Shown here: positions 1,482 through 58,060 of the stretch, one piece after another | Layout of the letters: every line of letters begins with the position of its first letter | Position numbering within the stretch: the first letter of the stretch is position 1 | Assembly: GCA_964252035.1 (NCBI GenBank) | Contig: OZ176200.1 | From: Podarcis erhardii | Taxonomy: Eukaryota | Reading direction: 5' to 3' (one strand) | DNA length: 64,000 nucleotides | Position numbers and translations under genes: made by a program | The notes under the pieces: model-generated | Database searches by the model: none | Seen by the model: the letters and a program-made list of their open reading frames with translations, nothing else | Told to the model about the DNA's origin: nothing

Positions 1482-1991
1482 AATAAGAGCTCCCTCGTCT
1501 TCTCTTTTTAGATGTCACCAAACTATGAAGCTGGGAGCAACTGAAAGGGTGGTCGAAATGACTGATCAGGGACTTTTCGCTCGAGTACCCATGATATGTT
1601 ATGACTCAAAGCCAAACCCTCCACTACTGAAATCAAAAAGCTGTTAATGTTAGATATTTTGGTAGAGGGTCCCAACCAGATGTCTTGAGCTCTTCTCACA
1701 AACCACCAACACCGGTTGATCACCCAGACTTGTGTGAGCAGCTCTAAATGCAGGAGGCAGGTGTGGATGGGCAGAAGTAGGTTGGGTATCTCAGGAAATG
1801 GCAGAGCATTTGGGATGAACCTTAGGGGCTACAACCACCACCATCGGAGCTTGTGAGTGGAAGTAGAGGTAATAGTAAAAATTAACTGTAGTGTGTGTGG
1901 AAAAAGTGTGCAAAAGGCAACACAGCGCAGGACTTAACAAATCCAAAGCAGATGGGAATGTGCAAGCATCCCTATGGCTCGTCAACTTCTT

Positions 1992-2342
1992 AAAGGTAAA
2001 GGTATCCCTGACCATTAGGTCCAGTCGTGGCCAACTCTGGGGTTGGGGTGCTCATCTCGCTTTATTGGCCGAGGGAGCCGGTGTACAGCTTCCAGGTCAT
2101 GTGGCTAGCATGACTAAGCCACTTCTGGCGAACCAGAGCAGCGCATGGAAATGCCGTTTACCTTCCTGCCGGAGTGGTACCTATTGATCTACTTGCACTC
2201 TGATGTGCTTTCGAAGTGCTAGGTTGGCAGGAGCAGAGACCGAGCAACGGGAGCTCACCCCGTCGTGGGGATTCAAACCACCGACCTTCTGATCAGCAAG
2301 TCCCAGGCTCTGTGGTTTAACCCACAGTGCCACCCGCATCCC
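1992..2342 (-). mobile_element. Sauria SINE
   Basis: tRNA-like head and (ACCTTT)n tail. TSD about CTC(G/A)TCAACTTCTT. Three other copies in the window. Confidence 0.9.
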
Positions 2343-24305: not shown

Positions 24306-24672
24306 AAAAGGTAAAGTACCCCTGACCATCAGGTCCAGTCGTGACCGACTCTGGGGTTGCGTGCTCATCTCGCTCAAGAGGCCGGGAGCCAGCGCTTGTC
24401 CGCAGACAGCTTCTGGGTCACGTGGCCAGCGTGACTAAACCACTTCTGGCGGACCAGAGCAGCACACGGAAACGCCGTTACCTTCCCACTCCCCACCGGA
24501 GAGCGGTCCCTATTTATCTACTCACACTTTTGAGGTGCTTTCGAACTGCTAGGTTGACAGGAGCTGGGACCGAACAACGGAAGCTCGCCCCGTCGTGGGG
24601 ATTCGAACCGCCGACCTTCCGATCAGCAAGTCCTAGGCACTGTGGTTTAACCCACAGCGCCACCCGCGGCCC
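24306..24672 (-). mobile_element. Sauria SINE
   Basis: 13-bp TSD ACTGTAGTCCATA at 24293-24305 and 24673-24685. Confidence 0.9.
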
Positions 24673-24835
24673 ACTGTAGTCCATACGTTGTCATAAAAAA
24701 TCCCCAAATATCTTCAAGTCTGTATTTTGTCTACTGGACTGAGGACTGCAGGACAATGTACTCTATTGAAAATAATGCAACAAATGTGCAAATATATGCA
24801 ACCATATTTCAAGGGGAACAGTGCAGCCTTATATT

Positions 24836-24971
24836 CAGGCATAGGCAAACTCAGCCCTCCAGATGTTTTGGGATTACAACTCCCATCATCCCTGACCACT
24901 GGTCCTGTTAGCTAGGGATTATGGGAGTTGTAGTCTCAAAACATCTGGAGGGCCAAGTTTGCCTATGCCTG
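24836..24971. mobile_element. 136-bp palindromic hAT-type MITE
   Basis: About 58-bp inverted arms starting CAGGCATAGGCAAACT; TSD CTT(A/G)TATT. Confidence 0.85.
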
Positions 24972-26317
24972 CTTGTATTTAACAACTCTCCTGCTGGCCA
25001 CATTAATCCAGGAATGCCATACAAGTGAGGCTAGTAACTTTTGTGGGCTGATTTACAAATCTAGAATAACCTCATCAGAATGCTCACATGTACCAAAGCT
25101 GCAGTCTCATATATGTCTATTCAGCAGTAATACTGCCCCATTAGATTCAGAGGGATGTACTTCCAGGTGTGTATGAGATTGGAGCCAAAATGCAATAGAA
25201 CATCTGAGTAGAAAGTGTTTTTTTAAAAAGCAGTAGCAATATACAGTATCCAGTTCTCAATTGTTATTTAGACATTCCAGATGCTTAACTACATTATTAC
25301 AAACCCTTCTAGTAAAGAATACATACACAATAATGTCCTAAGAAAACATAGCTGGCTGTATAGTCACTAAAATAAGTGGATACTGTATCATCAAAATAAA
25401 GCACCAAGTGCTTTATAAATTTCAGTGCTAGAATAAAATTCATGCTTAACCTTTGACGGGTTCATGAGCACAGAGATATTATTCATTGAGCAGTCAAATG
25501 CCAAACCCCAAGTTATAGCCAGTGGAAAAACAACCTTTTGACAAAGTCCCTCACTAAAAACTCATAAATAAACTTAGCAGTCATGGAATTGGAGAAAAGG
25601 TACCCTTGCAGATGGGTAACTCCTTCAAAAATAGTAAGTGTAGGATAGGTATAGATTGTTCTCAAAATGAAATGCAGTATGAAAACACACAAGGTTCTGT
25701 AGTGTGATATTTGTTCATAAACAATCTGGAGACCAGGGCTAGCAGGAAAAGTAGCCAAGTTTGCAGTTGACACCAAATGATTCCACATGGTGGTAGCTCA
25801 AACAAGTTTTGAGGTGTAGCAAAAGAACTTCTCCAAATGCAGTGAAGGCATTTGCACAAGATGTCAAATGAGATTTAGTGTAAATAGATTTAAGGTGATA
25901 TACATTAGGAGGGGGAAAAATCTAGATTCATATATAGACCAATACAGCATACATTGATGGGAAGCAACCAGACAGGGGAGCTTGAAATCATGGTGAATCG
26001 CTAATGAAAACATTGATTATGTGCATCACATCAGTAAGGGATAATTCCATGCTAGGGATTATTAGGTACGGAACTGATGACGAAGTGACCTGTGCAATAA
26101 ATCCACAGTGTAGCCATCTCCAGAATACTCTGCTCAGTTCTGGTCATCCCCCGTCCCACCCACTTGAAAGTGGTCCTCACAGAGCTAGAAAAGGGGAAAC
26201 AAGGCTATCAGGGAATTTAAGCAATTTCCCTACAAGATTAGGTCTAAACTTAAAAACAAAAGAAATTAATAGGATGGCATATAACAGAGACTTATAAGAG
26301 TATGCATTGCATAAAAA

Positions 26318-30468: not shown

Positions 30469-41357
<10,889 letters not shown>

Positions 41358-41787
41358 GTCGGCTACTTCCCGAACACCAGCACGAGCGGCTGCACCGGCG
41401 AGGGTGGCTTTGGAAAAAAAGGAGATCGATAGCTCGGCGAGCGTCGAGTGCGGGCTTCGGGACTTCCTTCCGTCTCTGGCGAGGAATCGCAGCCGATCGC
41501 TAAACCCCCGATCCAAAGGCGCCTCGCCAGGACGGCTCCTCCCTCTGGAACGGCGGAAGGTCGGCGCGTGCGCACTGGGTACTCGCCGCTTCGCGCTGTG
41601 AGCCGACCTCAGATCTTCGGGTGAAGGGCGGTATACACATTTAATGAAAGTATACGTAATAATAATAATAATAGCGACCTGCCCCATCCTTTAGCTATTG
41701 TTGTTTTCCCCCTTTTAAAATACTAACAATGCAGTACTATATGAGTCTCCTCAAAAGTAAGTCCCCTTGAATTTAATGAGATTTAGT

Positions 41788-42117
41788 AAAGGTAAAGGGA
41801 CCCCTGACCATTAGGTCCAGTCGTGACCGACTCTGGGGTTGCGGCGCTCATCTCGCTTTATTGGCCGAGGGAGCCGGCGTACAGCTTCCGGGTCATGTGG
41901 CCAGCAGGACTAAGCCACTTCTGGCAAACCAGAGCAGCGCACGGAAACGCCGTTTACCTTCCCGCCGGAGCGGTACCTATTTATCTACTTGCACTTTTGA
42001 TGTGTTTTTGAACTGCTAGGTTGACAGGAGCAGGGACTCGTGGGGATTTGAACCACCGACCTTCTGATCGGCAAGTCCTAGGCTCTGTGGTTTAACCCAC
42101 AGCGCCACCCACGTCCC
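41788..42117 (-). mobile_element. Sauria SINE with a short internal deletion, just upstream of the PSMA1 promoter
   Basis: 15-bp TSD TTAATGAGATTTAGT at 41773-41787 and 42118-42132. Confidence 0.9.
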
Positions 42118-42320
42118 TTAATGAGATTTAGTCCCAGGTAAATTAGTGTGGGACTGCAACCTAGATTGACACAACTGGGCGAGTTGGTGGGAATTGTAAT
42201 CCAAAATGTCTGGAGGGCACCAGGTTGGTAAAGACTGGTATAAATAAAAAGCTGTGGAATTATAGAGGCAATCAGGTGGCACTTTTGGCAGCACAGAGAG
42301 TCCAGAGCAAGGCATTAGGC

Positions 42321-42456
42321 CAGGCACCCCCAAACGTGGCCCTCCAGATGTTTTGGGACTACAACTCCCATCACCCCTAGCTAACAGCACCAATGGTCAG
42401 GGATGTTGGGAATTGTAGTCCCAAAACATCTGGAGAGCCGAGTTTGGGGGTACCTG
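42321..42456. mobile_element. Palindromic hAT-type MITE
   Basis: Perfect 8-bp TSD CATTAGGC. Confidence 0.87.
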
Positions 42457-42608
42457 CATTAGGCCAACCTTGCAGGAAGGCAAGTGCACTCTGTTGATGG
42501 GTGGGGCCAAAACAAATGAGATGGGGCAACAAGTTCAAGTCAAAGCAATTTACAGAAGCTTAAGCAGCCCAGGGAAAATATCAAGGCCTTTGCCTGGCAC
42601 TGAAATTA

Positions 42609-43080
42609 CAGTGGTGCCTCGCAAGACGAAAAGAATCCGTTCCGCGAGTCTCTTCGTCTAGCGGTTTTTTCGTCTTGCCAGTGGCGTAGCGTGGGGGGTG
42701 CAGGAGGGGCCAGCCGCACCAGGCGCAACATCTGGGGGTTAGGGTTAGGGGGCGCAAATCCACGGGTTAGGGGGCACAAATTACTTGCCTTGCCCCGGGT
42801 GCTGACAACCCACACTACGCCACTGCGTCTTGCGAAGCAAGCCCATTGACGGATTAGCGCTATTAGCAGTTTAGTGGCTTTTAGCGGCTTAGCGGATAAG
42901 CGGCTTAGCGGCTTAGAAAATGGGGGGGAGGGAAAAAACCCGCAGGATCTCGCAAGACATTTTCGTCTTGCAAAGCAAGCCCATAGGAAATTCGTTTTGC
43001 GAAGCACCTCCAAAACGGAAAACTCTTTCGTCTAGCGAGTTTTCCATCTTGCGAGGCATTCGTCTTGCGGGGCACCACTG
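42609..43080. mobile_element. pogo/Tigger-type MITE hosting a nested hAT MITE
   Basis: TA|CAGTGGTGCCTCGCAAGACGAA...TTCGTCTTGCGGGGCACCACTG|TA. Confidence 0.87.
42679..42825. mobile_element. hAT-type MITE (short form)
   Basis: CAGTGGCGTAGCGTGGG...CCCACACTACGCCACTG; perfect 8-bp TSD CGTCTTGC. Confidence 0.88.
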
Positions 43081-43558
43081 TACATCAAGGTCACATACAG
43101 GACATCATACTTTAATTCTGCTGTATTCTCAGTTACCCCTTCTGTTGCTACACTGAAGTAACATCCCAGAAAGAAGTTGCACATGCTTCATTCTAAGTAG
43201 TATGCCAGTGTAGTGAATAAATCATGCTATTGGTCTGTGTTGATCATCTGTAAGGATTGATGATTGTTACATCCTGATTCACCAAAATAGACCGAACAAC
43301 ATTTTTACACCTGGACACCAGGATTTTTCTACTACTACTATCTTACGAATAACAGTCTGAATCATATCTAATGAGAGAAAATATGGGCCCTGGGATGTGT
43401 GCACATCCCTCATTCCTACCTCCTGTCTGCGCACCCTTCTCAAGGTCTTCTTGTGAAGAAAGATACATGCATCTGTTACATCCTTCCTTTTTGCTGTAGC
43501 ACATAGTCACTCTTTTGGGGGTATGAGGAAGAATGGGCACATAATTCTTTTTTTCTGT

Positions 43559-43928
43559 TGTTATGTACTGAGTCGAATAGGATCCAAACTGCAGCAGTCT
43601 GATTGGTCCTAGAACAATAGGATCCAAAAGGCAGCAGTCTGATTGGTCCTAGAACAATAGGATTCAGAATGCAGCAGTCTGATTGGTCCTAGAACAATGC
43701 AGCAGTATGATTGGTTGGCAGGAACCACCCAATCATGCTCCAGATTGAAGTGAATCCACAACCTGATTGGTTTACAGTACAATTCCGGAATTAGCCAATC
43801 ATGTGCAGCCCATTGTGTAAATAATGTATATAAGGCAGATACTTTGAGGGGACTTTCATTCATTCCTCCTCACCACTATGAGCTGAATAAAGAGCATGAA
43901 ATCACTTTGCGACTCCGAGTATATTTCA
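43559..43928 (+). repeat. 5' LTR with 3x 40-bp CCAAT/SOX-like tandem units, TATATAA (43827-43833) and AATAAA (43886-43891)
   Basis: Direct repeat of 48144-48513; motifs read directly. Confidence 0.97.
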
Positions 43929-43929
43929 C

Positions 43930-43947
43930 TGGCGACGAGGATGGGAT
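43930..43947 (+). other. Primer-binding site complementary to the 3' end of tRNA-Ser(GCU)
   Basis: TGGCGACGAGGATGGGAT starts 1 nt after the 5' LTR. It is the reverse complement of ...ATCCCATCCTCGTCGCCA, the vertebrate tRNA-Ser(GCU) 3' end as recalled; verify against a tRNA database. Confidence 0.85.
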
Positions 43948-44053
43948 CCCGCTGAGCTGACTGCCACACACAGCACCGCAGCACCGCCACCTGCCGCACC
44001 GCTGCCTCGCACCGTGTATCCAGGCTTCAGCTCCGGGACACAAGGAACTCAGA

Positions 44054-47000
44054 ATGGCAACTGACAGCAACTTCTCGCCGTTCAACCCAGCATCTGGAGA
44101 CTGGGAAGCGTACGCCTCCCGTTTCACCTTCCTCCTAGAAGCCAAAGGGGTCACCGATGATGAAGACGCCAAGAAGAGGGCAATATTCTTCAGCGTCTGC
44201 GGAGAGGAGACATTTGAAATCGCCCGGGCTCTCCTTGCGCCTGAAGACGTTGCTACTGTTCCATACAAAACAATAATGGAACAGCTGAAGGGGCACTTTT
44301 CGCCACAGCCCTCAGTGGTGGCTCGTCGAAATGCCTTCTACGCAAAGCGGCAAGCCCCTGGGGAAACCATAACTGGGTTTGTGACCTCTCTCCGCCAAGC
44401 CGCCCGGTTCTGCAACTTCTCAGAGCTGGAGAACATGCTTCGTGACCGCCTCGTCGGTGGCCTGAGGGATGAGAAGCTGCAACGACGCCTCTACGCTAAG
44501 AAGAACCTAACGTTCCAGGTCGCTCTGGAGGAGGCCCTGGCAACGGAAGCTGCCGAGAGGTCGACACAAGAGGCACGGCCGAGCCAGCCGTCCCAACCGA
44601 GGGTCCACCATGAAGACCTCACCGACGACTCAGGATCTGACAGGGAGGAGGTGCACCGAGTACAGCAGCGCACTCAAGCAGCCCACATACCACAGCTGCC
44701 TCGACGAGAAGGAGGGAACTGCGCAAGCTGTGGAGAAAGTCATGAGAGGAGGACCTGCCGTTTCCGCAATGCAGAGTGCAGACAGTGCAGAAAATCGGGA
44801 CACATCGCCCGGGTGTGTCGGGCTCGGCCCACCCGACACCAGGCATCAGACGACCAATCCAAGAACCCCAGGTCCCGGGGCCCAACGCACCAAGGCAACT
44901 CGACAGAGCTCACGGACTTCCAGGTATACCAGTTGCCCCACCCCAACATAGAGAAAATTTATGTAGAGGTACAGATAGAGGGGGCCCCATGCCGCATGGA
45001 GCTTGACACGGGTTCAACTCTATCCATAATCTCGGCAAGGACCTTAAGGAAACTGTGTCCTACTGGGGGTCCCAAACTCAGGCCGGCCCCATTCACCCTC
45101 CGGGACTTCCAGAAACGTAAGGTCCCCACAATGGGGGTGGGGACCTTCAGGGTGCAATACCGAGGGCGGACGCGGCAACTGGACTTGCTTGTGGTCAAGG
45201 GCCCCTACATTAGCTTACTGGGATTGGCATGGTTTGGACCACTGGGGCTAGCTGTCACCGGGGTGAACCACACTAGCTTACAAGTGGACGTGGACGCCAT
45301 ATGCAAGGAATTTCCGGGGGTTTTCGATGGGAAATTGGGACAGTATACGGGCCCCCCCATTGCTCTACAGCTGGACCCCGCAGTACGACCAGTCAGGCTC
45401 AAGGCCCGCCGGGTCCCGTTCGCTCTGAAACCCCGTATAGACGAGGAATTGGACCGGCTCGTGGAGCAAGGAGTGCTGGAACCGGTACCTAATGCCCCCT
45501 GGGAAACCCCAATCGTCACACCTGTCAAGCCTAATGGCTCAGTCCGCATCTGCGCAGACTACAAATGTACCATAAACAAGGCCCTCACGGCCCATGCATA
45601 CCCAGTGCCAGTGGTCAGCCATGTCCTTGCCACCCTGGCTGGGTCGAAAATTTTTGGCAAGCTGGACTTGGCCCAAGCATATCAACAGCTGCCAGTAGAT
45701 GAGGCAACAGCAGAGGCACAGACGATTGTGACGCACAGAGGAGCATTCAGGGTAAAGCGGCTGCAATTCGGTGTCAGCGTGGCACCAGGCATATTCCAGA
45801 ATCTAATGGACTCTCTCCTTAAAGGGATTCCTGGCGTCACCCCCTTCTTCGATGATGTGTTGATTGCCGGGCCCACACCAGAGGAGTTTGAGGACCGCCT
45901 CCGCACCGTTCTGCACCGTTTCCAGACAGCGGGTCTCAAGGTAAAGCGGGAAAAATGTCTACTAGGAGTGCCCCAGGTGGACTTTCTGGGATTCATGGTG
46001 GACGCAGAAGGGGTCCACCCGACTGGGGACAAGGTACGGGCCATTTGTGATGCCCCAGCGCCCAGGAACAAGACTGAACTTCAGGCCTTCTTGGGACTAT
46101 TGAACTTTTACCATTCCTTCCTTCCCCACAAGGCGGCGGTAGCGGAGCCCCTACACAGACTCCTGGACAAGCGGGCCCCTTGGGTGTGGGGCCATCGCCA
46201 GGAGGCCGCATTCCAGGCAGTCAAGGACTTGCTTGTCTCAAACTCGGTCTTGGCACACTTCGACGAGAGGCTGCCGGTGGTGCTAGCATGCGACGCCTCA
46301 CCCTATGGCATTGGCGCTGTCCTGGGACACCAACTCCCAGATGGAAGAGAGGTACCGGTGGCATACTTTTCCCAGACACTCAACGCAACCGAGCGGAACT
46401 ACTCACAAATCGACAAGGAGGGCCTGGCAATCGTGAAGGGAGTAAAAAAATTCCATGATTTCTTGTATGGGCGGCCCTTCACCGTGGTGACTGACCACAA
46501 ACCGTTGCTTGGCTTGTTTGCCCCCGAAAAGCAGACCCCCCAAGTGCTGTCTCCTTGTGTCCTCAGGTGGTCAATTTTCCTTGCCAGCTACCAGTATGCA
46601 CTGATTCACCGCCCTGGGAAGGCGATGGGCCATGCGGACGCCCTCAGCAGGCTACCACTACCAGAAACAGGCCCCGACCCGGCACCTGCACAAGAGGTTA
46701 TGAGCCTGGAGCTGCTTCCCGACCGCCCCATTCAGGCACAAGAAGTTGCACACCATTCCAAGAAAGATAGGGTCATCTCCCGGGTCCTGGACTGGGTGTG
46801 GAGGGGATGGCCCAGCAGCAGCCCCGGGCCAGAATTCGCCAGCTACACAACCCGCAAACATGAACTGTCGGCCCACAAGGGGTGCCTGTTATGGGGAAGC
46901 AGGGTCGTTGTTCCCCAGCCCCTCCGCAAAAGGGTCCTCACAGCCCTACACGAGACACACCCAGGGGTAGTAAGAATGAAGGCCCTTGCCAGGAGTTATG

Positions 47001-48133
47001 TGTGGTGGCCGGGGATCGACGGAGAGATAGAGGCCTGGGTCAAACACTGCCAGGCCTGCCAAGAATCCCGCCCAGATCCCCCAAGGGCCCCAGTCCAGTC
47101 CTGGGAGTCTGCCCGAGCACCATGGTCACGCCTGCATGTGGACTTCGCTGGCCCCTTTCAGGGGAAAACATTCTTCATAGTGGTGGACTCCTACACCAAA
47201 TGGCTGGAAGTCGCACTGGTACCATCCACTTCTACATCCGCAGCCATCCGGGTACTACGCAGGCTGTTTGCAACGCACGGGCTCCCTGACACTCTCGTCT
47301 CAGACAACGGGACTGCATTTACGTCAGGAGAATTCCAAACCTTCACAGCGCAGAACGCCATCCGCCACATCCGTTCGGCGCCATTCCACCCTGCCACCAA
47401 TGGCCAAGCAGAACGCATGGTGCGGACCACCAAGGACACCCTTCGCCGCATGACGCAAGGGGATTGGGAGTACCGCCTTGCCACATTCCTTCTAGCACAG
47501 CACAGCACCCCCAGCTCAACGACTGGCCGGAGCCCCGCTGAACTACTAATGGGTCGGCGCCTTGCAATCAGATTGGACCGCCTTCACCCCGATAGAGCTC
47601 AGGATGAGGTAGGGGTGGGGGAAGGCAGGAACCCCCGGACCTTCGAGGCCCAGGACCCAGTGTACGCAAAGAATTTTGGGGCAGGCCCTGCATGGGTACC
47701 CGCCACAGTCACCAGGGTCACTGGCCCCGTGTCGTACGAGGTGCTAACGGATGGGGGGCAATGCTGGCGCCGCCACTGTGACCAGATACGGCGACGATTC
47801 CCGGGAGAAAACCAGGAGGAGGAGGACAGGTCAGAGGAGTCCCAGGGGAACAGTGGGGCAGTGAGGCCCATAGAGCAGCAGGGGCCAGCAGGAGAGGCAG
47901 AACCAGTAAATACAGAGAGGTCCCGGGAGGCCGAAAGGACACCGGAACCAGAACCACGACTGAGCGAGCCGGTTGCGCCAGACCAAACAGCCCCATCACA
48001 GCCAGCATCCTTGGAACACGAGCCAGAACCAGAACCCCGGACCAGGGAACACCCCAGGCCGCAACGCACACGTAGGCCGCCAGCGTACCTTGAGGACTAT
48101 GAATGCGACCTCCCGGGCAGGACTGGAACTTAG
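44054..48133 (+). CDS. Retrotransposon Gag-Pol polyprotein, 1359 aa (Gag with two Zn knuckles, PR, RT, RNase H, IN)
   Basis: Zn knuckles CASCGESHERRTC and CRQCRKSGHIARVC. Protease LDTGS (D at 45005). RT RLQFG...FFDD (45845-45856). RNase H CDAS...YSQIDKEGLA. Integrase HETH/CQAC with D(47141), D(47303) and E(47411), giving D-35-E spacing. GPVSY motif. PR-RT-RH-IN order is Ty3/Gypsy. Confidence 0.98.
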   Translation: MATDSNFSPFNPASGDWEAYASRFTFLLEAKGVTDDEDAKKRAIFFSVCGEETFEIARALLAPEDVATVPYKTIMEQLKGHFSPQPSVVARRNAFYAKRQAPGETITGFVTSLRQAARFCNFSELENMLRDRLVGGLRDEKLQRRLYAKKNLTFQVALEEALATEAAERSTQEARPSQPSQPRVHHEDLTDDSGSDREEVHRVQQRTQAAHIPQLPRREGGNCASCGESHERRTCRFRNAECRQCRKSGHIARVCRARPTRHQASDDQSKNPRSRGPTHQGNSTELTDFQVYQLPHPNIEKIYVEVQIEGAPCRMELDTGSTLSIISARTLRKLCPTGGPKLRPAPFTLRDFQKRKVPTMGVGTFRVQYRGRTRQLDLLVVKGPYISLLGLAWFGPLGLAVTGVNHTSLQVDVDAICKEFPGVFDGKLGQYTGPPIALQLDPAVRPVRLKARRVPFALKPRIDEELDRLVEQGVLEPVPNAPWETPIVTPVKPNGSVRICADYKCTINKALTAHAYPVPVVSHVLATLAGSKIFGKLDLAQAYQQLPVDEATAEAQTIVTHRGAFRVKRLQFGVSVAPGIFQNLMDSLLKGIPGVTPFFDDVLIAGPTPEEFEDRLRTVLHRFQTAGLKVKREKCLLGVPQVDFLGFMVDAEGVHPTGDKVRAICDAPAPRNKTELQAFLGLLNFYHSFLPHKAAVAEPLHRLLDKRAPWVWGHRQEAAFQAVKDLLVSNSVLAHFDERLPVVLACDASPYGIGAVLGHQLPDGREVPVAYFSQTLNATERNYSQIDKEGLAIVKGVKKFHDFLYGRPFTVVTDHKPLLGLFAPEKQTPQVLSPCVLRWSIFLASYQYALIHRPGKAMGHADALSRLPLPETGPDPAPAQEVMSLELLPDRPIQAQEVAHHSKKDRVISRVLDWVWRGWPSSSPGPEFASYTTRKHELSAHKGCLLWGSRVVVPQPLRKRVLTALHETHPGVVRMKALARSYVWWPGIDGEIEAWVKHCQACQESRPDPPRAPVQSWESARAPWSRLHVDFAGPFQGKTFFIVVDSYTKWLEVALVPSTSTSAAIRVLRRLFATHGLPDTLVSDNGTAFTSGEFQTFTAQNAIRHIRSAPFHPATNGQAERMVRTTKDTLRRMTQGDWEYRLATFLLAQHSTPSSTTGRSPAELLMGRRLAIRLDRLHPDRAQDEVGVGEGRNPRTFEAQDPVYAKNFGAGPAWVPATVTRVTGPVSYEVLTDGGQCWRRHCDQIRRRFPGENQEEEDRSEESQGNSGAVRPIEQQGPAGEAEPVNTERSREAERTPEPEPRLSEPVAPDQTAPSQPASLEHEPEPEPRTREHPRPQRTRRPPAYLEDYECDLPGRTGT

Positions 48134-48143
48134 AGGGGAGGGG

Positions 48144-48513
48144 TGTTATGTACTGAGTCGAATAGGATCCAAACTGCAGCAGTCTGATTGGTCCTAGAAC
48201 AATAGGATCCAAAAGGCAGCAGTCTGATTGGTCCTAGAACAATAGGATTCAGAATGCAGCAGTCTGATTGGTCCTAGAACAATGCAGCAGTATGATTGGT
48301 TGGCAGGAACCACCCAATCATGCTCCAGATTGAAGTGAATCCACAACCTGATTGGTTTACAGTACAATTCCGGAATTAGCCAATCATGTGCAGCCCATTG
48401 TGTAAATAATGTATATAAGGCAGATACTTTGAGGGGACTTTCATTCATTCCTCCTCACCACTATGAGCTGAATAAAGAGCATGAAATCACTTTGCGACTC
48501 CGAGTATATTTCA
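48144..48513 (+). repeat. 3' LTR, preceded by polypurine tract AGAGGGGAGGGG (48132-48143)
   Basis: Identical by eye to the 5' LTR. Confidence 0.97.
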
Positions 48514-48566
48514 TCTGTGCTCTCACGTTTGAAAGGTACTATCTCATCACTTCAGGGTAGGAGACC

Positions 48567-48640
48567 TAGAATCATAGAATCATAGAGTTGGAAGAGACCA
48601 CAAGGGCCATCGAGTCCAACCCCCTGCCAAGCAGGAAACC
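48567..48640 (-). mobile_element. CR1 3' tail fragment
   Basis: (AGAATCAT)n tail followed by AGAGTTGGAAGAGACCACAAGGGCCATCGAGTCCAACCCC. Confidence 0.65.
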
Positions 48641-51436
48641 TGTTGAAAGAGGACAGGATTCCTGCCCTTTTAAATAGTCTGAGTAGAAAAGGTACCTTGT
48701 TATGCAAGTTACACTTGCTGAAATCCTCTCTTCTGCACAAGTATTATTCTTGCTCATCTTCACAGAATAGTAACAGATCCTAGTTGTCACAAGCTATGTC
48801 CCTAAGTATAAGCATTTTTGTTACATTTTTGCCTTATGTATAAAGAGGTTTTGCTACATTTTTGGCTGTTGTGATCAAGGATATTATTAGCTCATTGCTA
48901 TATTTGTTTTGTTTATTTATTAAATTATTTATTTGTTTTGTTTATTTATTAAATTCCCATACTTCCCTTCAGCCGAGGATCATAAGGCGGTTTACAATAT
49001 ATTTTGACTGCCAACGCAAAAGAAAAGTTCTGATATGGAAACTTATCATTAATACAAATTTGTCTGGAGTCCCTTTTGCTATATGTGAGGCTTGTGTCTT
49101 TTTACCCTTGTAATTCCCTACTATACGACTAGATGGGAACTACTGCTTCAATTGCTATTTATTTAATCTATTATTTTCATTATGCCTTTGTATATTCACT
49201 CTCAGAGTTGGCAGCCTTGTTCAGCAAATAATCTTTTCTGTCTTTCATATCTTGTTTGCCAGTTGTGTTTACTCATCCATTTTTCTCTTTAGTTGTCAAG
49301 CAGCAACCACCCAAACTGCATCCTCTGTACCAAAAGCCATCTAAGGAAGCCCAGCAGATGGTCTAGCTGCTGTGAAACAAAGAGTTGCTTTCATTCTTAA
49401 ATTTGTTTCCTCAGCTCTTTTCATTTGGTAACTCTGTAATAGAACATTTGACCTTTGCAAAGATCAAAATGTAAATAATGTTCTTTTCATGTTGTTCTTT
49501 AGCAACCATTTTAAAAGTCAAATAACATTAAAGTCCTTTTTTACTTTTAAAACGTTATTGCTGCCAAGATCTCTCTCCCCCTCTGCCTTGGAGTCCTTCT
49601 GTGATTTATCACAATATGCATTAGACCTGAACAGGCTTGTCAGCATCAGGTGATCAGAACTATAAAGCCCAACCCTCTGTGGTTTAACTTGGAAATAAGT
49701 CCCAGTGAAATCAATTAATTTAGGCTGTAGCCTTGCAGCAGAAGGCCCACTGGGTTCAGTGATGCTTATATCTAGATATGTATAGGATTGCAACCTTTTT
49801 CAAGGGAAAAGGGGGCAATCCTATACATTCTTACCTTAAGCCTTCTTGAACTCAATGGGTCTTTCTGCTAGGTAAACAGGAATAGGACTGCACTGATGGA
49901 AGCAATAATATGCTTTTACTTTGTCTTAAACTCAGAAGAAAACAGGTTCAGATTCAAGACCCATCAGTAAAAACATGCATAGGATTGGACTAATTTACAA
50001 AAACAAACTTTGAAAAGGTTGTGGTTAAACTTACATAATGATAAAGTATGCACAGTATGCCACATTCAAAAACCCCAAATGATTTAATACATCTAGATTT
50101 TACTCTACAGTAAGTTGAAAACTTGCCATTGCATGAAATGTGAAAAGCCATTTCTTAGAACTTTATATTGTTTCCAAGAATATACTTATTACTGAAATAC
50201 CAATAAGCATTTCTCAAACTATCTTATGGCTTCATTTTTGTGTTTTTTGTATAATTATGGTATTGGTTTTCACTTTGAAACATCTGCCTATTATGAAAAT
50301 TGAACTAATGCTCAGAAAAAGTGTTGCCGATTTTAATTGAGCAACCACCCTGCTGTGAAAAACCTCACCTGATTTCTTCAGATCATGTTGCTGTGAAAGG
50401 AATGGGAGCAGAGCAGCTTTTTGGAGCTCATTTTGCAAATCTAGCTCAGATAGCTAGATAAAGGTCTTGTGCTTAAATTCTGCTTGTGGTTTCCCAGCAG
50501 CTTCTGGTTGGCCACTGTGAGAACAGGATGCTGGACTAGATGGGCCATTGGCCTCATTCAGCAGGCTCTTATGGAACTACATGCACAAAATACGTTTTTA
50601 GCATGGAAGCATGCCTGGATCATGATCAATAATTCTATTTTTCTTCCCAAGATATAGAATTATGAGGCCCATCAATATTTCAGTTATGCTTCTACAGTGG
50701 AGTATGCATAGCTCAGTTCCTTGTAGCAGTTCTCTGAAACACATCAATGCACTTCAAATAAATGAAAATGGTAAGCAGAAATGTTTGTAGGATCCAAGCC
50801 AAGGTGTAGTGCAAATAGCAGAAGAGCATGAGCCATGAAAAAAAACATTTTTACAAAGACTGCAGTAAAGTCAGTGTTTTTCTTATCTGCCTTGGGAATT
50901 TAAAACAAGCTGCATTGGATCAGATTAAAGGGCTATCTAGTTCAGCATCCTGTTCTCAGATGCCTATGGGATGCACACAAGCATGGCATGAGTGCAACAG
51001 CCCTCTCCCCACTCTCATGTTGCCCAGCAAATATAATTGTAGATAAAATGTTAAGTATAGAAAATTTAATCATCCTAGCTTATCTGGCTACAGTTCTGAA
51101 TTTTTGTATACCATCATCCACTAAAGAATGACATTTTAAAACACTGGAGAAGGCACCTGGGAGACTGTTTGGATGATGATTAAAATGTATCTGCCATGGA
51201 TAAGAAACAGCTATGTGCATAAGATGATAGCTGTAGATGTATGAAGTCTGTGGTACTACTTAACTTCTGCTTTACAATACAGGAAATGACTTTGGTACAA
51301 TATACCCAGCCAAGTTATTGTATTTCATAATATTTTTCAGAGTGAATGTTAGTTTTGGGAGTCCTGTTGACATCGTTCACATTTATTTACAGTTTGCCAA
51401 CCTGCCGAATAATGCATTGGCTGCAACCGCTTTGTG

Positions 51437-55741: not shown

Positions 55742-55885
55742 CCTGGATCTATGCCCCACTGAACTCAGTGGGATGAACTGCACATGCCTATCCATTTCTA
55801 CTCAGCACGGCCAGCCCAAATCTTTTTGGCATCTGAGATGAACCACAGAATGGTGCCCACCACCCACCAGACCAGGAAAGAAGGG

Positions 55886-56255
55886 TGAAATATACTCAGA
55901 GTCGCAAAGTGATTTCATGCTCTTTATTCAGCTCATAGTGGTGAGGAGGAATGAATGAATGTCCCCTCAAAGTATCTGCTTTATATACATTATTTACACA
56001 ATGGGCTGCACATGATTGGCTAATTCCAGGATTCTACTGTAGGCCAATCAGGTTGTGGATTCACTTCTATCTGGAGCATGATTGGGTGGTTCCTGCTAAC
56101 CAATCATACTGCTGCATTGTTCTAGGACCAATCAGACTGCTGCATTCTGAATCCTATTGTTCTAGGACCAATCAGACTGCTGCCTTTTGGAGCCTATTGT
56201 TCTAGGACCAATCAGACTGCTGCAGTTTGGATCCTATTCAACTCAGTACATAACA
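55886..56255 (-). mobile_element. Solo LTR of the same Gypsy family
   Basis: 370 bp, reverse complement of the element LTRs with about 12 substitutions. 5-bp TSD AAGGG at 55881-55885 and 56256-56260. Confidence 0.96.
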
Positions 56256-56569
56256 AAGGGGTTCGAGTGAAGATCTACATCAGGAACCAAGGTGGAAAAT
56301 CTTATCAACCCCACCAGTCAGTTGAAAGGGGAATCAAAGGCTGTCATGGGGCAGGGAGGGAGAAGGGTCCCACTCTGAACCTTGCCAGGTGGGTGCAGAT
56401 AGACCAGGAGACCCCAGAGGGCAGCCCCTGCCATTCCCTCCCGGGTCTGCTGTTCCCGTGGAACCTGCGGTCGCCTCACTTTGCCTCCTGCTGGCCCCCA
56501 GAAGCAAGTCCTACGGAAATCAGCGGGGCTTACTCCCCAGTAAGCAGGGCGAGAACTGCAGCTTTACTG

Positions 56570-58060
56570 CCGAGATGGTCCGAGTTCGTGCGCTGCTCGG
56601 CCTCCCGCCGCCCTCCACCTCCGACCGTTAGGATCCAATTGTGCGGGGGGGGGGCGGGGGCGGATTTTCTAATTCGTCGGTGCTTTCGGCGCCTACTGCC
56701 ACGTGACTTCATGCGGCGGCGGGGCAAAACTTCGTTCGCCACACCGGACCCTCCTGAAAGTCGTTATTTCTCAGAGCGTGGAAGCGCGCGCGAACGGACC
56801 GTTGCAGCCGTTGAGCTCTGGGAGGCGACCGCGAGTTCCCTCCGAGGGAGCGCAGCGAGCGAGGGAGAAAGAGATACTTTTACCTTTCCCTCTCTCTCTC
56901 CCTCCTCCCCCCTTTTACCCACCATGCTCCGAGTCCGGACTCTCAGCCTCTGCCGTCGCCGCCGTTTGGGCTCCGCGGGCCGCCGCCGCCTCGCTCCGCG
57001 TGCCTTTCTTTCGACGAAGATGAGCGAGGCAAAGCCCGGAGGGAAGAGAAGCTGACGGCCTCCTCCCCGCTTTTCCCGCGCGACCACCATGAGGGAAGAG
57101 AAAGAAGCCTCTCCCTCCTGCTCCCCCCTCGCTCCTCACAGGCATAACAACAAACTTGCCAGCCCGCCGCCTCCTGCCCCGGCCGGCGCGGAGCCCAGCC
57201 TGAGGAACGGCTACGTGAAGGGCCACGCCACCCCGCTGCCGCAGAGCCCGCCGCTCGGCTCTGTCTCGCTGCTCCGGGCCGCTTGCCCGCGGGGCTCCCT
57301 CTCCGTGGGGCTGGGCGCCCTGGCTGCCGCTTCGGCGGCGCTGCTGCTCTCGTTCTGGCTCGCCTGGAGCGAGGGCGAGAGGAGGGCGGCGGCGGCGGCG
57401 GCGGCTCCGGGGGCGCTGCTGTTGCCGCTGGCGGGACTGGGCCAGTGCCTGAGCCCGCTCTTCACCCTCGCCTGCGCTTTCTTCTTCCTCACCTGCTACC
57501 TGGCCCGGGACGAGCCCGGCGGCCCCCGGTGGCTCCTGGCGCTGCCGCTGTGCTGCCAGGCGGGGGACTTGGCGGCGCTGCTCTTCCCCCGCCGAGAGGA
57601 GGCGGCTGAGCAGGGCGCCCCCGACCCCCCGACGGCCCAACTGCAGGTGCTGGCGGGCCGGCTGCTGGCCACGCTGAGCACCGTGGCCGGGCTGACCCTC
57701 GCGCAGCGCAGCCTCGGGCACGGCAGGAGACTCCTGCTGCTGGCCTTCTCTGCCCTCGTGTGGCTGCTGTCGCTCTCCAGCCTGGGCTCTCTGGCCCCGG
57801 CCCTTAGGCCCCTGCTGTCCGGCGCCGTCGGAGTGGCGGGGTGCCTGCTGGCGCTGCTGGGCGGACCGCGCTGCGCCTTCGCCTCCTGCTGCTGCTGCTG
57901 CTGTTGCTCGCCCGGGCGGGAGCCCCAGCCGCACCACCAGCCCCAGCCGCCGCCGCCGCCGCACGACCACCGCCAGTCTCCTTACCCCAAGTCGCCGAGC
58001 GGCGCAGCAGAGGAGAAAGTGCCCGTGATCCGACCCCGGAGGAGATCCAGCTGCGTGTCT
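56570..58060 (+). promoter_or_regulatory. CpG island / PDE3B promoter and exon 1; GC boxes 56651-56663, E-box CACGTGAC 56700-56707
   Basis: GC- and CpG-rich block; motifs read directly. Confidence 0.85.

What the first reader, a model, noticed from the sequence alone, without database searches (positions are those of the whole stretch)
43554..48518. Apparently intact, very recently inserted Gypsy LTR retrotransposon 2.2 kb upstream of PSMA1
Seen: two 370-bp LTRs with no difference found by eye, a perfect 5-bp TSD, an 18-nt PBS, a PPT and a stop-free 1359-aa ORF with PR, RT, RNase H and IN motifs. Established: the two LTRs are identical at integration and diverge afterwards. Inference: this is a very young, possibly still mobile and population-polymorphic element. 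The twin Zn knuckles, 5-bp TSD and tRNA-Ser primer point to a Mag-type lineage. It is the strongest candidate for an active, possibly unnamed family in this window.
Basis: partly seen in the sequence, partly recalled or inferred. Interest (0 to 1): 0.75.

Follow-up and report, generated by a model that had tools for sequence, protein, structure and literature searches.

The report
Complete young Mag-type Gypsy retrotransposon
This is a real, structurally complete Gypsy-type jumping gene of a family common in lacertid (wall and common) lizards; it is an ordinary member of a well-known kind, and whether it still moves could not be tested.

Summary
The two 370-bp LTRs are 370/370 identical. There is a perfect 5-bp duplication (TCTGT), an 18-nt primer site, a purine tract against the 3' LTR, and one stop-free 1359-aa gag-pol frame.

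The frame encodes a capsid-like fold, two zinc knuckles, protease, RT, RNase H and integrase. There is no env and no chromodomain.

It belongs to a family already in public protein sets as "K02A2.6-like". Podarcis raffonei fragments are 99% identical. A burst of Zootoca vivipara copies is 90-92% identical to this one and over 99% identical among themselves.

Published features tie this label to the Mag lineage, probably its C-clade (SURL/Steamer-like). No tree with named reference elements could be built.

"Very recent" is weaker than it sounds: zero changes in 740 LTR bases only bounds the age at about 2-4 Myr (95%).

This copy has Cys at residue 835, where 69 of 71 distant and 13 of 13 close relatives have Arg. 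Its own competence is therefore open.

A solo LTR of the same family lies 7.4 kb away. The scan noted another intact Mag-like element elsewhere in this genome.

The parts
43554..43558 (+). 5' target-site duplication TCTGT
   Evidence: Identical to 48514-48518.
43559..43928 (+). 5' LTR, 370 bp, TG..CA ends. U3 holds 3.1 tandem copies of a 40-bp unit (43576-43698) and 7 CCAAT/ATTGG boxes. TATATAA at 43827 and AATAAA at 43886.
   Evidence: 370/370 identical to the 3' LTR. Tandem repeat. Motif counts against 0.8 expected. The U3/R/U5 borders are inferred, not shown.
43930..43947 (+). Primer binding site, 18 nt, starts TGG. Its complement reads as T-loop end, T-stem, acceptor strand, discriminator G and CCA, as in a tRNA-Ser(GCT) 3' end.
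   Evidence: Sequence. The tRNA assignment is from my own knowledge and was not tool-tested; no tRNA gene lies in the window.
44054..48133 (+). Single gag-pol ORF of 1359 aa plus stop, with a strong Kozak context
   Evidence: It keeps 166 of 167 columns that are at least 95% conserved among 71 full-length relatives.
44063..44575 (+). Gag capsid-like two-lobed helical domain (aa 4-174)
   Evidence: AlphaFold model with pLDDT above 90 over aa 11-170. The listed Foldseek rows and all 50 listed VIA rows are retroelement or retroviral capsids, Z 8-11. No Pfam hit.
44720..44818 (+). Nucleocapsid with two Zn knuckles (CX2CX3HX4C and CX2CX4HX4C; aa 223-255)
   Evidence: All eight ligand residues are invariant in 42 sequences.
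44963..45235 (+). Aspartyl protease (aa 304-394, active site D318-T-G)
   Evidence: Pfam gag-asp_proteas and Asp_protease_2, below the curated cut-off. D318 and G320 are conserved.
45557..45997 (+). Reverse transcriptase (aa 502-648; FFDD box at 598-601)
   Evidence: Pfam RVT_1, E 1.2e-18. FFDD is shared by all 14 close relatives. Closest solved structure is Ty3 Gag-Pol 7q5b, E 1.5e-78.
46187..46591 (+). RNase H (aa 712-846). The codon at 46556-46558 encodes Cys835, where relatives have Arg.
   Evidence: Pfam RT_RNaseH_2 and RT_RNaseH. Arg in 69/71 distant and 13/13 close relatives.
46910..47458 (+). Integrase: HHCC zinc domain (aa 953-1007) and DDE core (aa 1023-1135; D1030, D1084, E1120)
   Evidence: Pfam Integrase_H2C2, rve and rve_3. 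The catalytic residues are conserved.
47723..48130 (+). GPY/F-type motif (GPVSY at aa 1224), then a poorly conserved acidic and proline-rich tail. No chromodomain.
   Evidence: The tail is 69% identical to Zootoca against 94-96% in pol. No Pfam domain.
48132..48143 (+). Polypurine tract, directly before the 3' LTR
48144..48513 (+). 3' LTR, 370 bp
48514..48518 (+). 3' target-site duplication TCTGT
55881..56260 (-). Solo LTR of the same family (55886-56255) with its own 5-bp TSD CCCTT
   Evidence: 96.8% identical to the element's LTRs. TSD read.

Best explanation
It is a complete, env-less Ty3/Gypsy (Metaviridae) LTR retrotransposon of the Mag lineage, probably the C-clade ('K02A2.6-like', SURL/Steamer-like). 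The family is shared by lacertid lizards.

Inferred life cycle:
- Transcription starts in the 5' LTR after TATATAA, driven by a U3 rich in CCAAT boxes, and ends after AATAAA in the 3' LTR.
- The RNA is translated as one Gag-Pol polyprotein, which the element's own protease cuts.
- Gag (capsid fold plus two Zn knuckles) packages the RNA.
- A tRNA-Ser 3' end primes minus-strand DNA at the PBS, and the purine tract primes the plus strand.
- The integrase inserts the cDNA with a 5-bp staggered cut.

This insertion happened within roughly the last 2-4 Myr, between the PSMA1 promoter and the next gene downstream. Shown: the anatomy, the relatives and the age bound. Inferred: the transcript ends, the priming tRNA, and that the family is still active. 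Not shown: that this copy can move.
For: Identical LTRs, TSD, PBS and PPT. Intact ORF with PR-RT-RH-IN order. Capsid fold and invariant knuckles. It keeps 166 of 167 highly conserved residues. Ty3 is the closest solved pol. Relatives are 99% identical in Podarcis raffonei and 90-92% in a 133-member, mostly Zootoca cluster whose full copies are 99.3-99.8% alike. A second insertion of the family, now a solo LTR, has its own 5-bp TSD. Internal CpG obs/exp is 0.4-0.8, against 0.05-0.25 in the flanking DNA downstream. Mag features come from the literature: Ser or Leu PBS, 5-bp TSD, 4.5-5.3 kb, 1-2 ORFs (PMC3286476). The 5' LTR end fits TGTNATRT (PMC3601003). The K02A2.6-like label is tied to the C-clade (PMC8905726). 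MchSLE1 has the same build, with 4758 bp, one ORF of 1376 aa and two Zn fingers (PMC11046912).
Against: No phylogeny with named Mag, SURL, Jule or Steamer references could be run. The 3' LTR end differs at 2 of 8 positions from the published Mag C motif. Cys835 sits at a near-invariant Arg. There are no data on transcription, polymorphism or genome-wide copy number. LTR identity has low resolving power.
Confidence: 0.85

Rival explanations
1. It is a real insertion of this family, but a fixed and no longer mobile copy. It is either up to a few Myr old, or older with LTRs kept alike by gene conversion. It may be crippled by the residue-835 change or silenced by the host.
For: Zero differences in 2 x 370 bp is compatible with ages up to 2-4 Myr. 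This copy alone has Cys at a position where 69/71 distant and 13/13 close relatives have Arg. The codon is TGT, as a CpG transition from CGT would give; the relatives' codons were not available.
Against: All other 166 highly conserved residues are kept. Internal CpG is not yet depleted. The TSD is perfect. Near-identical copies exist in Podarcis.
Confidence: 0.35
2. The perfect LTR identity, or the element itself, is an assembly artefact from repeat collapse or consensus polishing with reads from other copies.
For: It is a multi-copy family, since a solo LTR lies in the same window. No reads could be laid on the locus.
Against: The unique flanks join the element through a perfect 5-bp TSD, and the identity stops exactly at the LTR ends. 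The internal sequence carries private substitutions not seen in other copies.
Confidence: 0.04
3. It is an endogenous retrovirus, a chromovirus or a domesticated gag-pol gene rather than a Mag-type retrotransposon.
For: The gag fold is shared with retroviral and domesticated capsids such as MLV, PNMA2, PEG10 and Arc.
Against: Pol matches Ty3 far better (E 1.5e-78) than the retroviral-type polymerase chains (E 1e-26 or weaker). There is no env, because the ORF ends 10 bp before the 3' LTR. There is no chromodomain. The LTRs, TSD, PBS and PPT are intact, unlike a domesticated gene.
Confidence: 0.02

Closest known systems
'Uncharacterized protein K02A2.6-like' of Zootoca vivipara (e.g. XP_060126817.1, 1356 aa; a 133-member 90% cluster) and Podarcis raffonei fragments (XP_053257964.1, XP_053239995.1)
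   Same: Same family. Identity is 90-92% over the full length (94-96% in pol) to Zootoca and 99% over about 630 aa to P. raffonei, with the same length and domain order.
   Different: Gag (82-87%) and the C-terminal tail (69%) have diverged from the Zootoca subfamily. Those records are gene predictions, not described transposon families. This copy has Cys835 where they have Arg.
Steamer and Steamer-like elements of bivalves (e.g. MchSLE1), Mag C-clade
   Same: Size near 4.8-5 kb, short LTRs, one gag-pol ORF of about 1.36-1.38 thousand aa, two Zn fingers in the nucleocapsid, no env, and relatives annotated K02A2.6-like (PMC11046912; PMC8905726).
   Different: MchSLE1 has 185-bp LTRs, a tRNA-Asn PBS and a DSG protease motif. 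Here the LTRs are 370 bp, the PBS is Ser-type and the motif is DTG. No direct sequence comparison was possible.
Mag-lineage elements of mosquitoes (Culex cqgypsy families); Mag of Bombyx; Jule of Xiphophorus; SURL of sea urchins
   Same: PBS for tRNA-Ser or Leu, mostly 5-bp TSD, 4.5-5.3 kb and 1-2 ORFs (PMC3286476 Table 1). The 5' LTR end matches TGTNATRT / TGTTRKR (PMC3601003 Table 3). The lineage is known in vertebrates.
   Different: The LTR is longer than most of these (140-300 bp). The 3' LTR end differs from the Mag C motif at 2 of 8 positions. Placement was not tested by a tree.
Ty3 of yeast (solved Gag-Pol 7q5b, RT 4ol8, capsid 6r24)
   Same: Same superfamily. Pol aligns over 650 aa at E 1.5e-78, and the capsid fold is shared.
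   Different: Ty3 has separate gag and pol frames and targets Pol III genes. Neither feature is seen here.

Membership tests
Ty3/Gypsy (Metaviridae) LTR retrotransposon | Direct LTRs with TG..CA ends, flanked by a short target-site duplication | tested here: met
   370-bp LTRs, 100% identical, with TG..CA ends; TSD TCTGT.
Ty3/Gypsy (Metaviridae) LTR retrotransposon | Pol domain order PR-RT-RNase H-IN | tested here: met
   Pfam hits in that order. Best solved match is Ty3 Gag-Pol.
Ty3/Gypsy (Metaviridae) LTR retrotransposon | Gag with a capsid fold and a nucleocapsid Zn knuckle | tested here: met
   Model and fold matches at Z 8-11 to retroelement capsids. Two invariant knuckles.
Ty3/Gypsy (Metaviridae) LTR retrotransposon | PBS next to the 5' LTR and PPT next to the 3' LTR | tested here: met
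   PBS at 43930-43947 and PPT at 48132-48143. The tRNA identity comes from knowledge only.
Mag lineage (A/B/C clades; C-clade = SURL/Steamer-like) | RT-RH-IN groups with the reference elements (Mag, SURL, Jule, Steamer) in a phylogeny | not testable with these tools
   No named reference sequences were available. Indirect support only: the nearest named proteins are all 'K02A2.6-like', a label PMC8905726 relates to the C-clade.
Mag lineage (A/B/C clades; C-clade = SURL/Steamer-like) | Structural habit: about 4.5-5.3 kb, 1-2 ORFs, no env, PBS for tRNA-Ser or Leu, 5-bp TSD | tested here: met
   4955 bp, one ORF, Ser-type PBS, and a 5-bp TSD at two independent insertions, compared with PMC3286476 Table 1.
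Mag lineage (A/B/C clades; C-clade = SURL/Steamer-like) | LTR end motifs (Mag C: 5' TGTNATRT, 3' AYANAACA) | tested here: inconclusive
   The 5' end TGTTATGT fits. The 3' end ATATTTCA differs at 2 of 8 positions.
Chromovirus | Chromodomain at the integrase C-terminus | tested here: not met
   No chromo hit in the whole protein or in the tail, even at E up to 5.
Errantivirus / endogenous retrovirus | An env ORF after pol | tested here: not met
   The pol stop lies 10 bp before the 3' LTR, so there is no room for env.

The most novel reading that the evidence does not exclude
The family is transposing now in wall lizards, and this insertion is still polymorphic. Its CCAAT-box-rich LTRs, here and at the solo LTR 7.4 kb away, may act on the PSMA1 and downstream-gene promoters. 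A further possibility comes from the tree: tick and Trichinella relatives nest in or beside the squamate clade, which may mean this Mag C-type group has moved horizontally between parasites and reptiles.
Probability: 0.3. Interest if true: 0.4.

Novelty: new member of a known kind. Interest (0 to 1): 0.25.

Why it matters
Gypsy elements are lost as mobile elements in birds and mammals (PMC7397244). Lizards are therefore among the amniotes where this superfamily can still be studied alive.

A complete copy with identical LTRs, from a family that has just burst in Zootoca, is a reasonable marker for population studies and for TE annotation of lacertid genomes. It adds no new mechanism or new kind of element.

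Tried and rejected

**Searches that came back empty**
- The exact protein is not in the 15-billion-sequence collection.
- No tRNA gene lies in the window to test the PBS against.
- No Rfam family is present in 43000-49000.
- Pfam finds nothing in the first 300 aa; the fold was needed to call gag.
- No paralogous empty site exists in the window.
- Bowen and McDonald 1999, which could say which Cer element K02A2.6 belongs to, was not held.
- No paper describing this lacertid family was found.

**Readings rejected**
- Chromovirus, ERV and domesticated gene are rejected; see the rival explanations.
- The tick/Trichinella horizontal-transfer idea stays a hint only, because identities are just 54-58%.

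**Handling rules followed**
- The majority line that align_proteins prints by itself was used only to read off conserved positions and was not kept.
- I sent no DNA letters of the element to paper searches beyond a 7-11 letter PBS prefix.
Full report
**Observation**

The repeat finder and a direct string comparison show two 370-bp direct repeats, at 43559-43928 and 48144-48513, with no mismatch. The identity stops exactly at both ends. Each repeat begins TG and ends CA. The five bases TCTGT flank the element on both sides, at 43554-43558 and 48514-48518.

One base after the 5' LTR lies an 18-nt stretch beginning TGG, at 43930-43947. Its complement has the layout of a tRNA 3' end: the last T-loop bases, a 5-nt T-stem strand, a 7-nt acceptor strand, discriminator G and CCA. 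From my own knowledge it equals the 3' end of vertebrate tRNA-Ser(GCT). No tool here could confirm that, and there is no tRNA gene in the window.

A 12-nt purine tract at 48132-48143 abuts the 3' LTR. Between the LTRs runs a single ORF, 44054-48133, of 1359 codons.

**What the ORF encodes**

Pfam finds, in order:
- a weak aspartyl-protease match (aa 304-394),
- RVT_1 (aa 502-648),
- RT_RNaseH and RT_RNaseH_2 (aa 712-846),
- Integrase_H2C2 (aa 953-1007),
- rve (aa 1023-1113).

Pfam finds nothing in the first 300 aa. I therefore folded that part with an alignment of 41 relatives. Residues 11-170 are predicted with pLDDT above 90 as nine helices. The listed Foldseek matches and all 50 listed VIA-align matches are capsid proteins of retroelements or retroviruses, including Copia, dArc1, PNMA2, PEG10, MLV, RSV, Ty1 and Ty3. 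Z is 8-11, with rmsd 2-3 A over the C-lobe. For helical folds such Z values alone are not decisive, but the uniformity of the hit list is.

Two zinc knuckles (C223-C226-H230-C235 and C242-C245-H250-C255) are invariant in 42 sequences. The tail after the GPVSY motif (aa 1224) is acidic and proline-rich, and has no chromodomain. The stop codon lies 10 bp before the 3' LTR, so there is no env. The closest solved pol is yeast Ty3 (7q5b, E 1.5e-78), far ahead of the retroviral-type polymerase chains.

**Integrity at residue level**

I aligned 71 full-length relatives and looked at the 167 columns that are at least 95% conserved. This copy agrees at 166 of them. These include the protease D318/G320, the RT D538/D600/D601, the RNase H D747/E789/D814, and the integrase H966/H969/C999/C1002 and D1030/D1084/E1120.

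The exception is residue 835, in the RNase H region (codon 46556-46558). This copy has Cys where 69 of 71 distant and all 13 close relatives have Arg. Whether this matters for activity is unknown. It means "apparently intact" is true of the frame but not proven for the enzyme. The FFDD form of the RT box is a family trait, shared by 14 of 14 close relatives.

**Relatives**

The word-based protein search gave 911 hits at E of 1e-10 or better. The best is a 1356-aa Zootoca vivipara protein named "uncharacterized protein K02A2.6-like", at 91% identity and full coverage. It represents a 90% cluster of 133 sequences. The listed members are Zootoca proteins, several of them full length, plus Podarcis raffonei fragments.

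Two P. raffonei fragments are 99.2% and 99.0% identical to this copy over about 630 aa. The window therefore most likely comes from Podarcis or a close relative. This is an inference, since the species is not given.

The Zootoca copies are 99.3-99.8% identical to each other, which points to a very recent burst in that species. Against Zootoca, pol is 94-96% identical, gag 82-87% and the tail 69%. The next relatives are about 61% identical (Lacerta agilis and unnamed assemblies). Below those come many squamate, Xenopus, fish, insect, tick and nematode proteins at 45-58%. In a FastTree of 72 full-length proteins, this copy is sister to the Zootoca burst.

**A second insertion in the window**

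A solo LTR at 55886-56255 on the - strand is 96.8% identical to the LTRs. It has its own perfect 5-bp duplication, CCCTT. The family has therefore hit this 64-kb stretch at least twice, at different times, and the 5-bp duplication is a property of the family. Another note, s1-254818, reports an intact "Mag-like" Gypsy element on another piece of this genome. I could not inspect it.

**Age**

With no difference in 2 x 370 bp, the probability of the data is exp(-740 x mu x T). At the rate used for Podarcis muralis, 1.98e-9 per site per year (PMC8760935), the 95% upper bound is 2.0 Myr and the median 0.47 Myr. At 1e-9 the bound is 4.0 Myr.

CpG obs/exp inside the element is 0.4-0.8, against 0.05-0.25 in the flanking DNA downstream. 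That agrees with little time under methylation decay. "Young" is fair. "Very recent" and "polymorphic" are not shown.

**Classification**

No named reference elements were available, so a proper RT-RH-IN tree against GyDB could not be made. The indirect evidence is consistent:
- In Culex, Mag-lineage elements are 4.5-5.3 kb, have 1-2 ORFs, use tRNA-Ser or Leu, and mostly make 5-bp duplications. The mdg1 and mdg3 elements make 4-bp ones (PMC3286476 Table 1).
- The published 5' LTR end motif for Mag C (TGTNATRT) and Mag A (TGTTRKR) fits TGTTATGT. The 3' motif fits only 6 of 8 positions (PMC3601003 Table 3).
- Mag is known in vertebrates, for example Jule.
- PMC8905726 notes that Steamer-like, C-clade elements are commonly annotated "K02A2.6-like".
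- The mussel element MchSLE1 has the same build: 4758 bp, one ORF of 1376 aa, and two Zn fingers (PMC11046912).

I file it as Ty3/Gypsy with certainty and as Mag lineage, probably C-clade, with good but indirect support.

**Context**

The PSMA1 exon encoding [15 protein letters not shown] lies on the - strand near 39479, and the next exon near 38687. A CpG island covers about 41000-42000. The element is on the + strand, so it points away from PSMA1. Its 5' LTR lies about 1.5-2.5 kb from the likely PSMA1 promoter.

I did not verify that name.

The LTR U3 has 3.1 copies of a 40-bp unit and 7 CCAAT/ATTGG boxes against 0.8 expected. It also has TATATAA at 43827 and AATAAA at 43886. The regulatory reading of these motifs is inference only.

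**What could not be done**

Polymorphism, expression, assembly support and copy number in this genome therefore remain untested.
- A bench test of mobility is left to a person to decide.

**Verdict**

This is a correct observation of an ordinary thing: a complete, young member of a lacertid Mag-type Gypsy family. The family is already present in public protein sets, although apparently not described as a transposon family in the papers searched.

Noticed in passing
window 55881-56260 (- strand): Solo LTR of the same family, 96.8% identical, with its own perfect 5-bp TSD CCCTT. It lies about 0.3 kb before the CpG island at about 56500-58000.
   Followed up: yes
window 43576-43698 and 48161-48283: The U3 of the LTR has 3.1 tandem copies of a 40-bp unit, each with an ATTGG (inverted CCAAT) box. 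There are 7 such boxes per LTR against 0.8 expected. The solo LTR has the same array.
   Followed up: partly
proteins P0008, P0015, P0051, P0073 (tree): A Rhipicephalus microplus (tick) polyprotein from a 41-member cluster nests inside the squamate clade of K02A2.6-like elements. Ornithodoros plus Trichinella sit beside that clade. Identities are only 54-58%, so this is a weak hint of old horizontal transfer between parasites and reptiles. Per PMC8905726, the Steamer-like-element survey of Metzger 2018 spans several phyla; from memory, that paper reports horizontal transfer.
   Followed up: partly
proteins P0001, P0124-P0134 (Zootoca vivipara): Copies of the same family in Zootoca are 99.3-99.8% identical at protein level, at least three of them full length (1356 aa). 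This is the signature of a very recent burst in that species.
   Followed up: partly
window 38687-39479 (- strand) and 41000-42000: PSMA1 exons encoding [15 protein letters not shown] and [25 protein letters not shown].., with a CpG island about 1.5-2.5 kb further up. The initiator ATG must lie in a separate first exon, which I did not locate.
   Followed up: partly
window 1991-2342, 24531-24977, 41787-42462 and others: Several interspersed repeat families of 100-210 bp and 61-92% identity are scattered through the window, probably SINE or other old repeats. I did not examine them.
   Followed up: no
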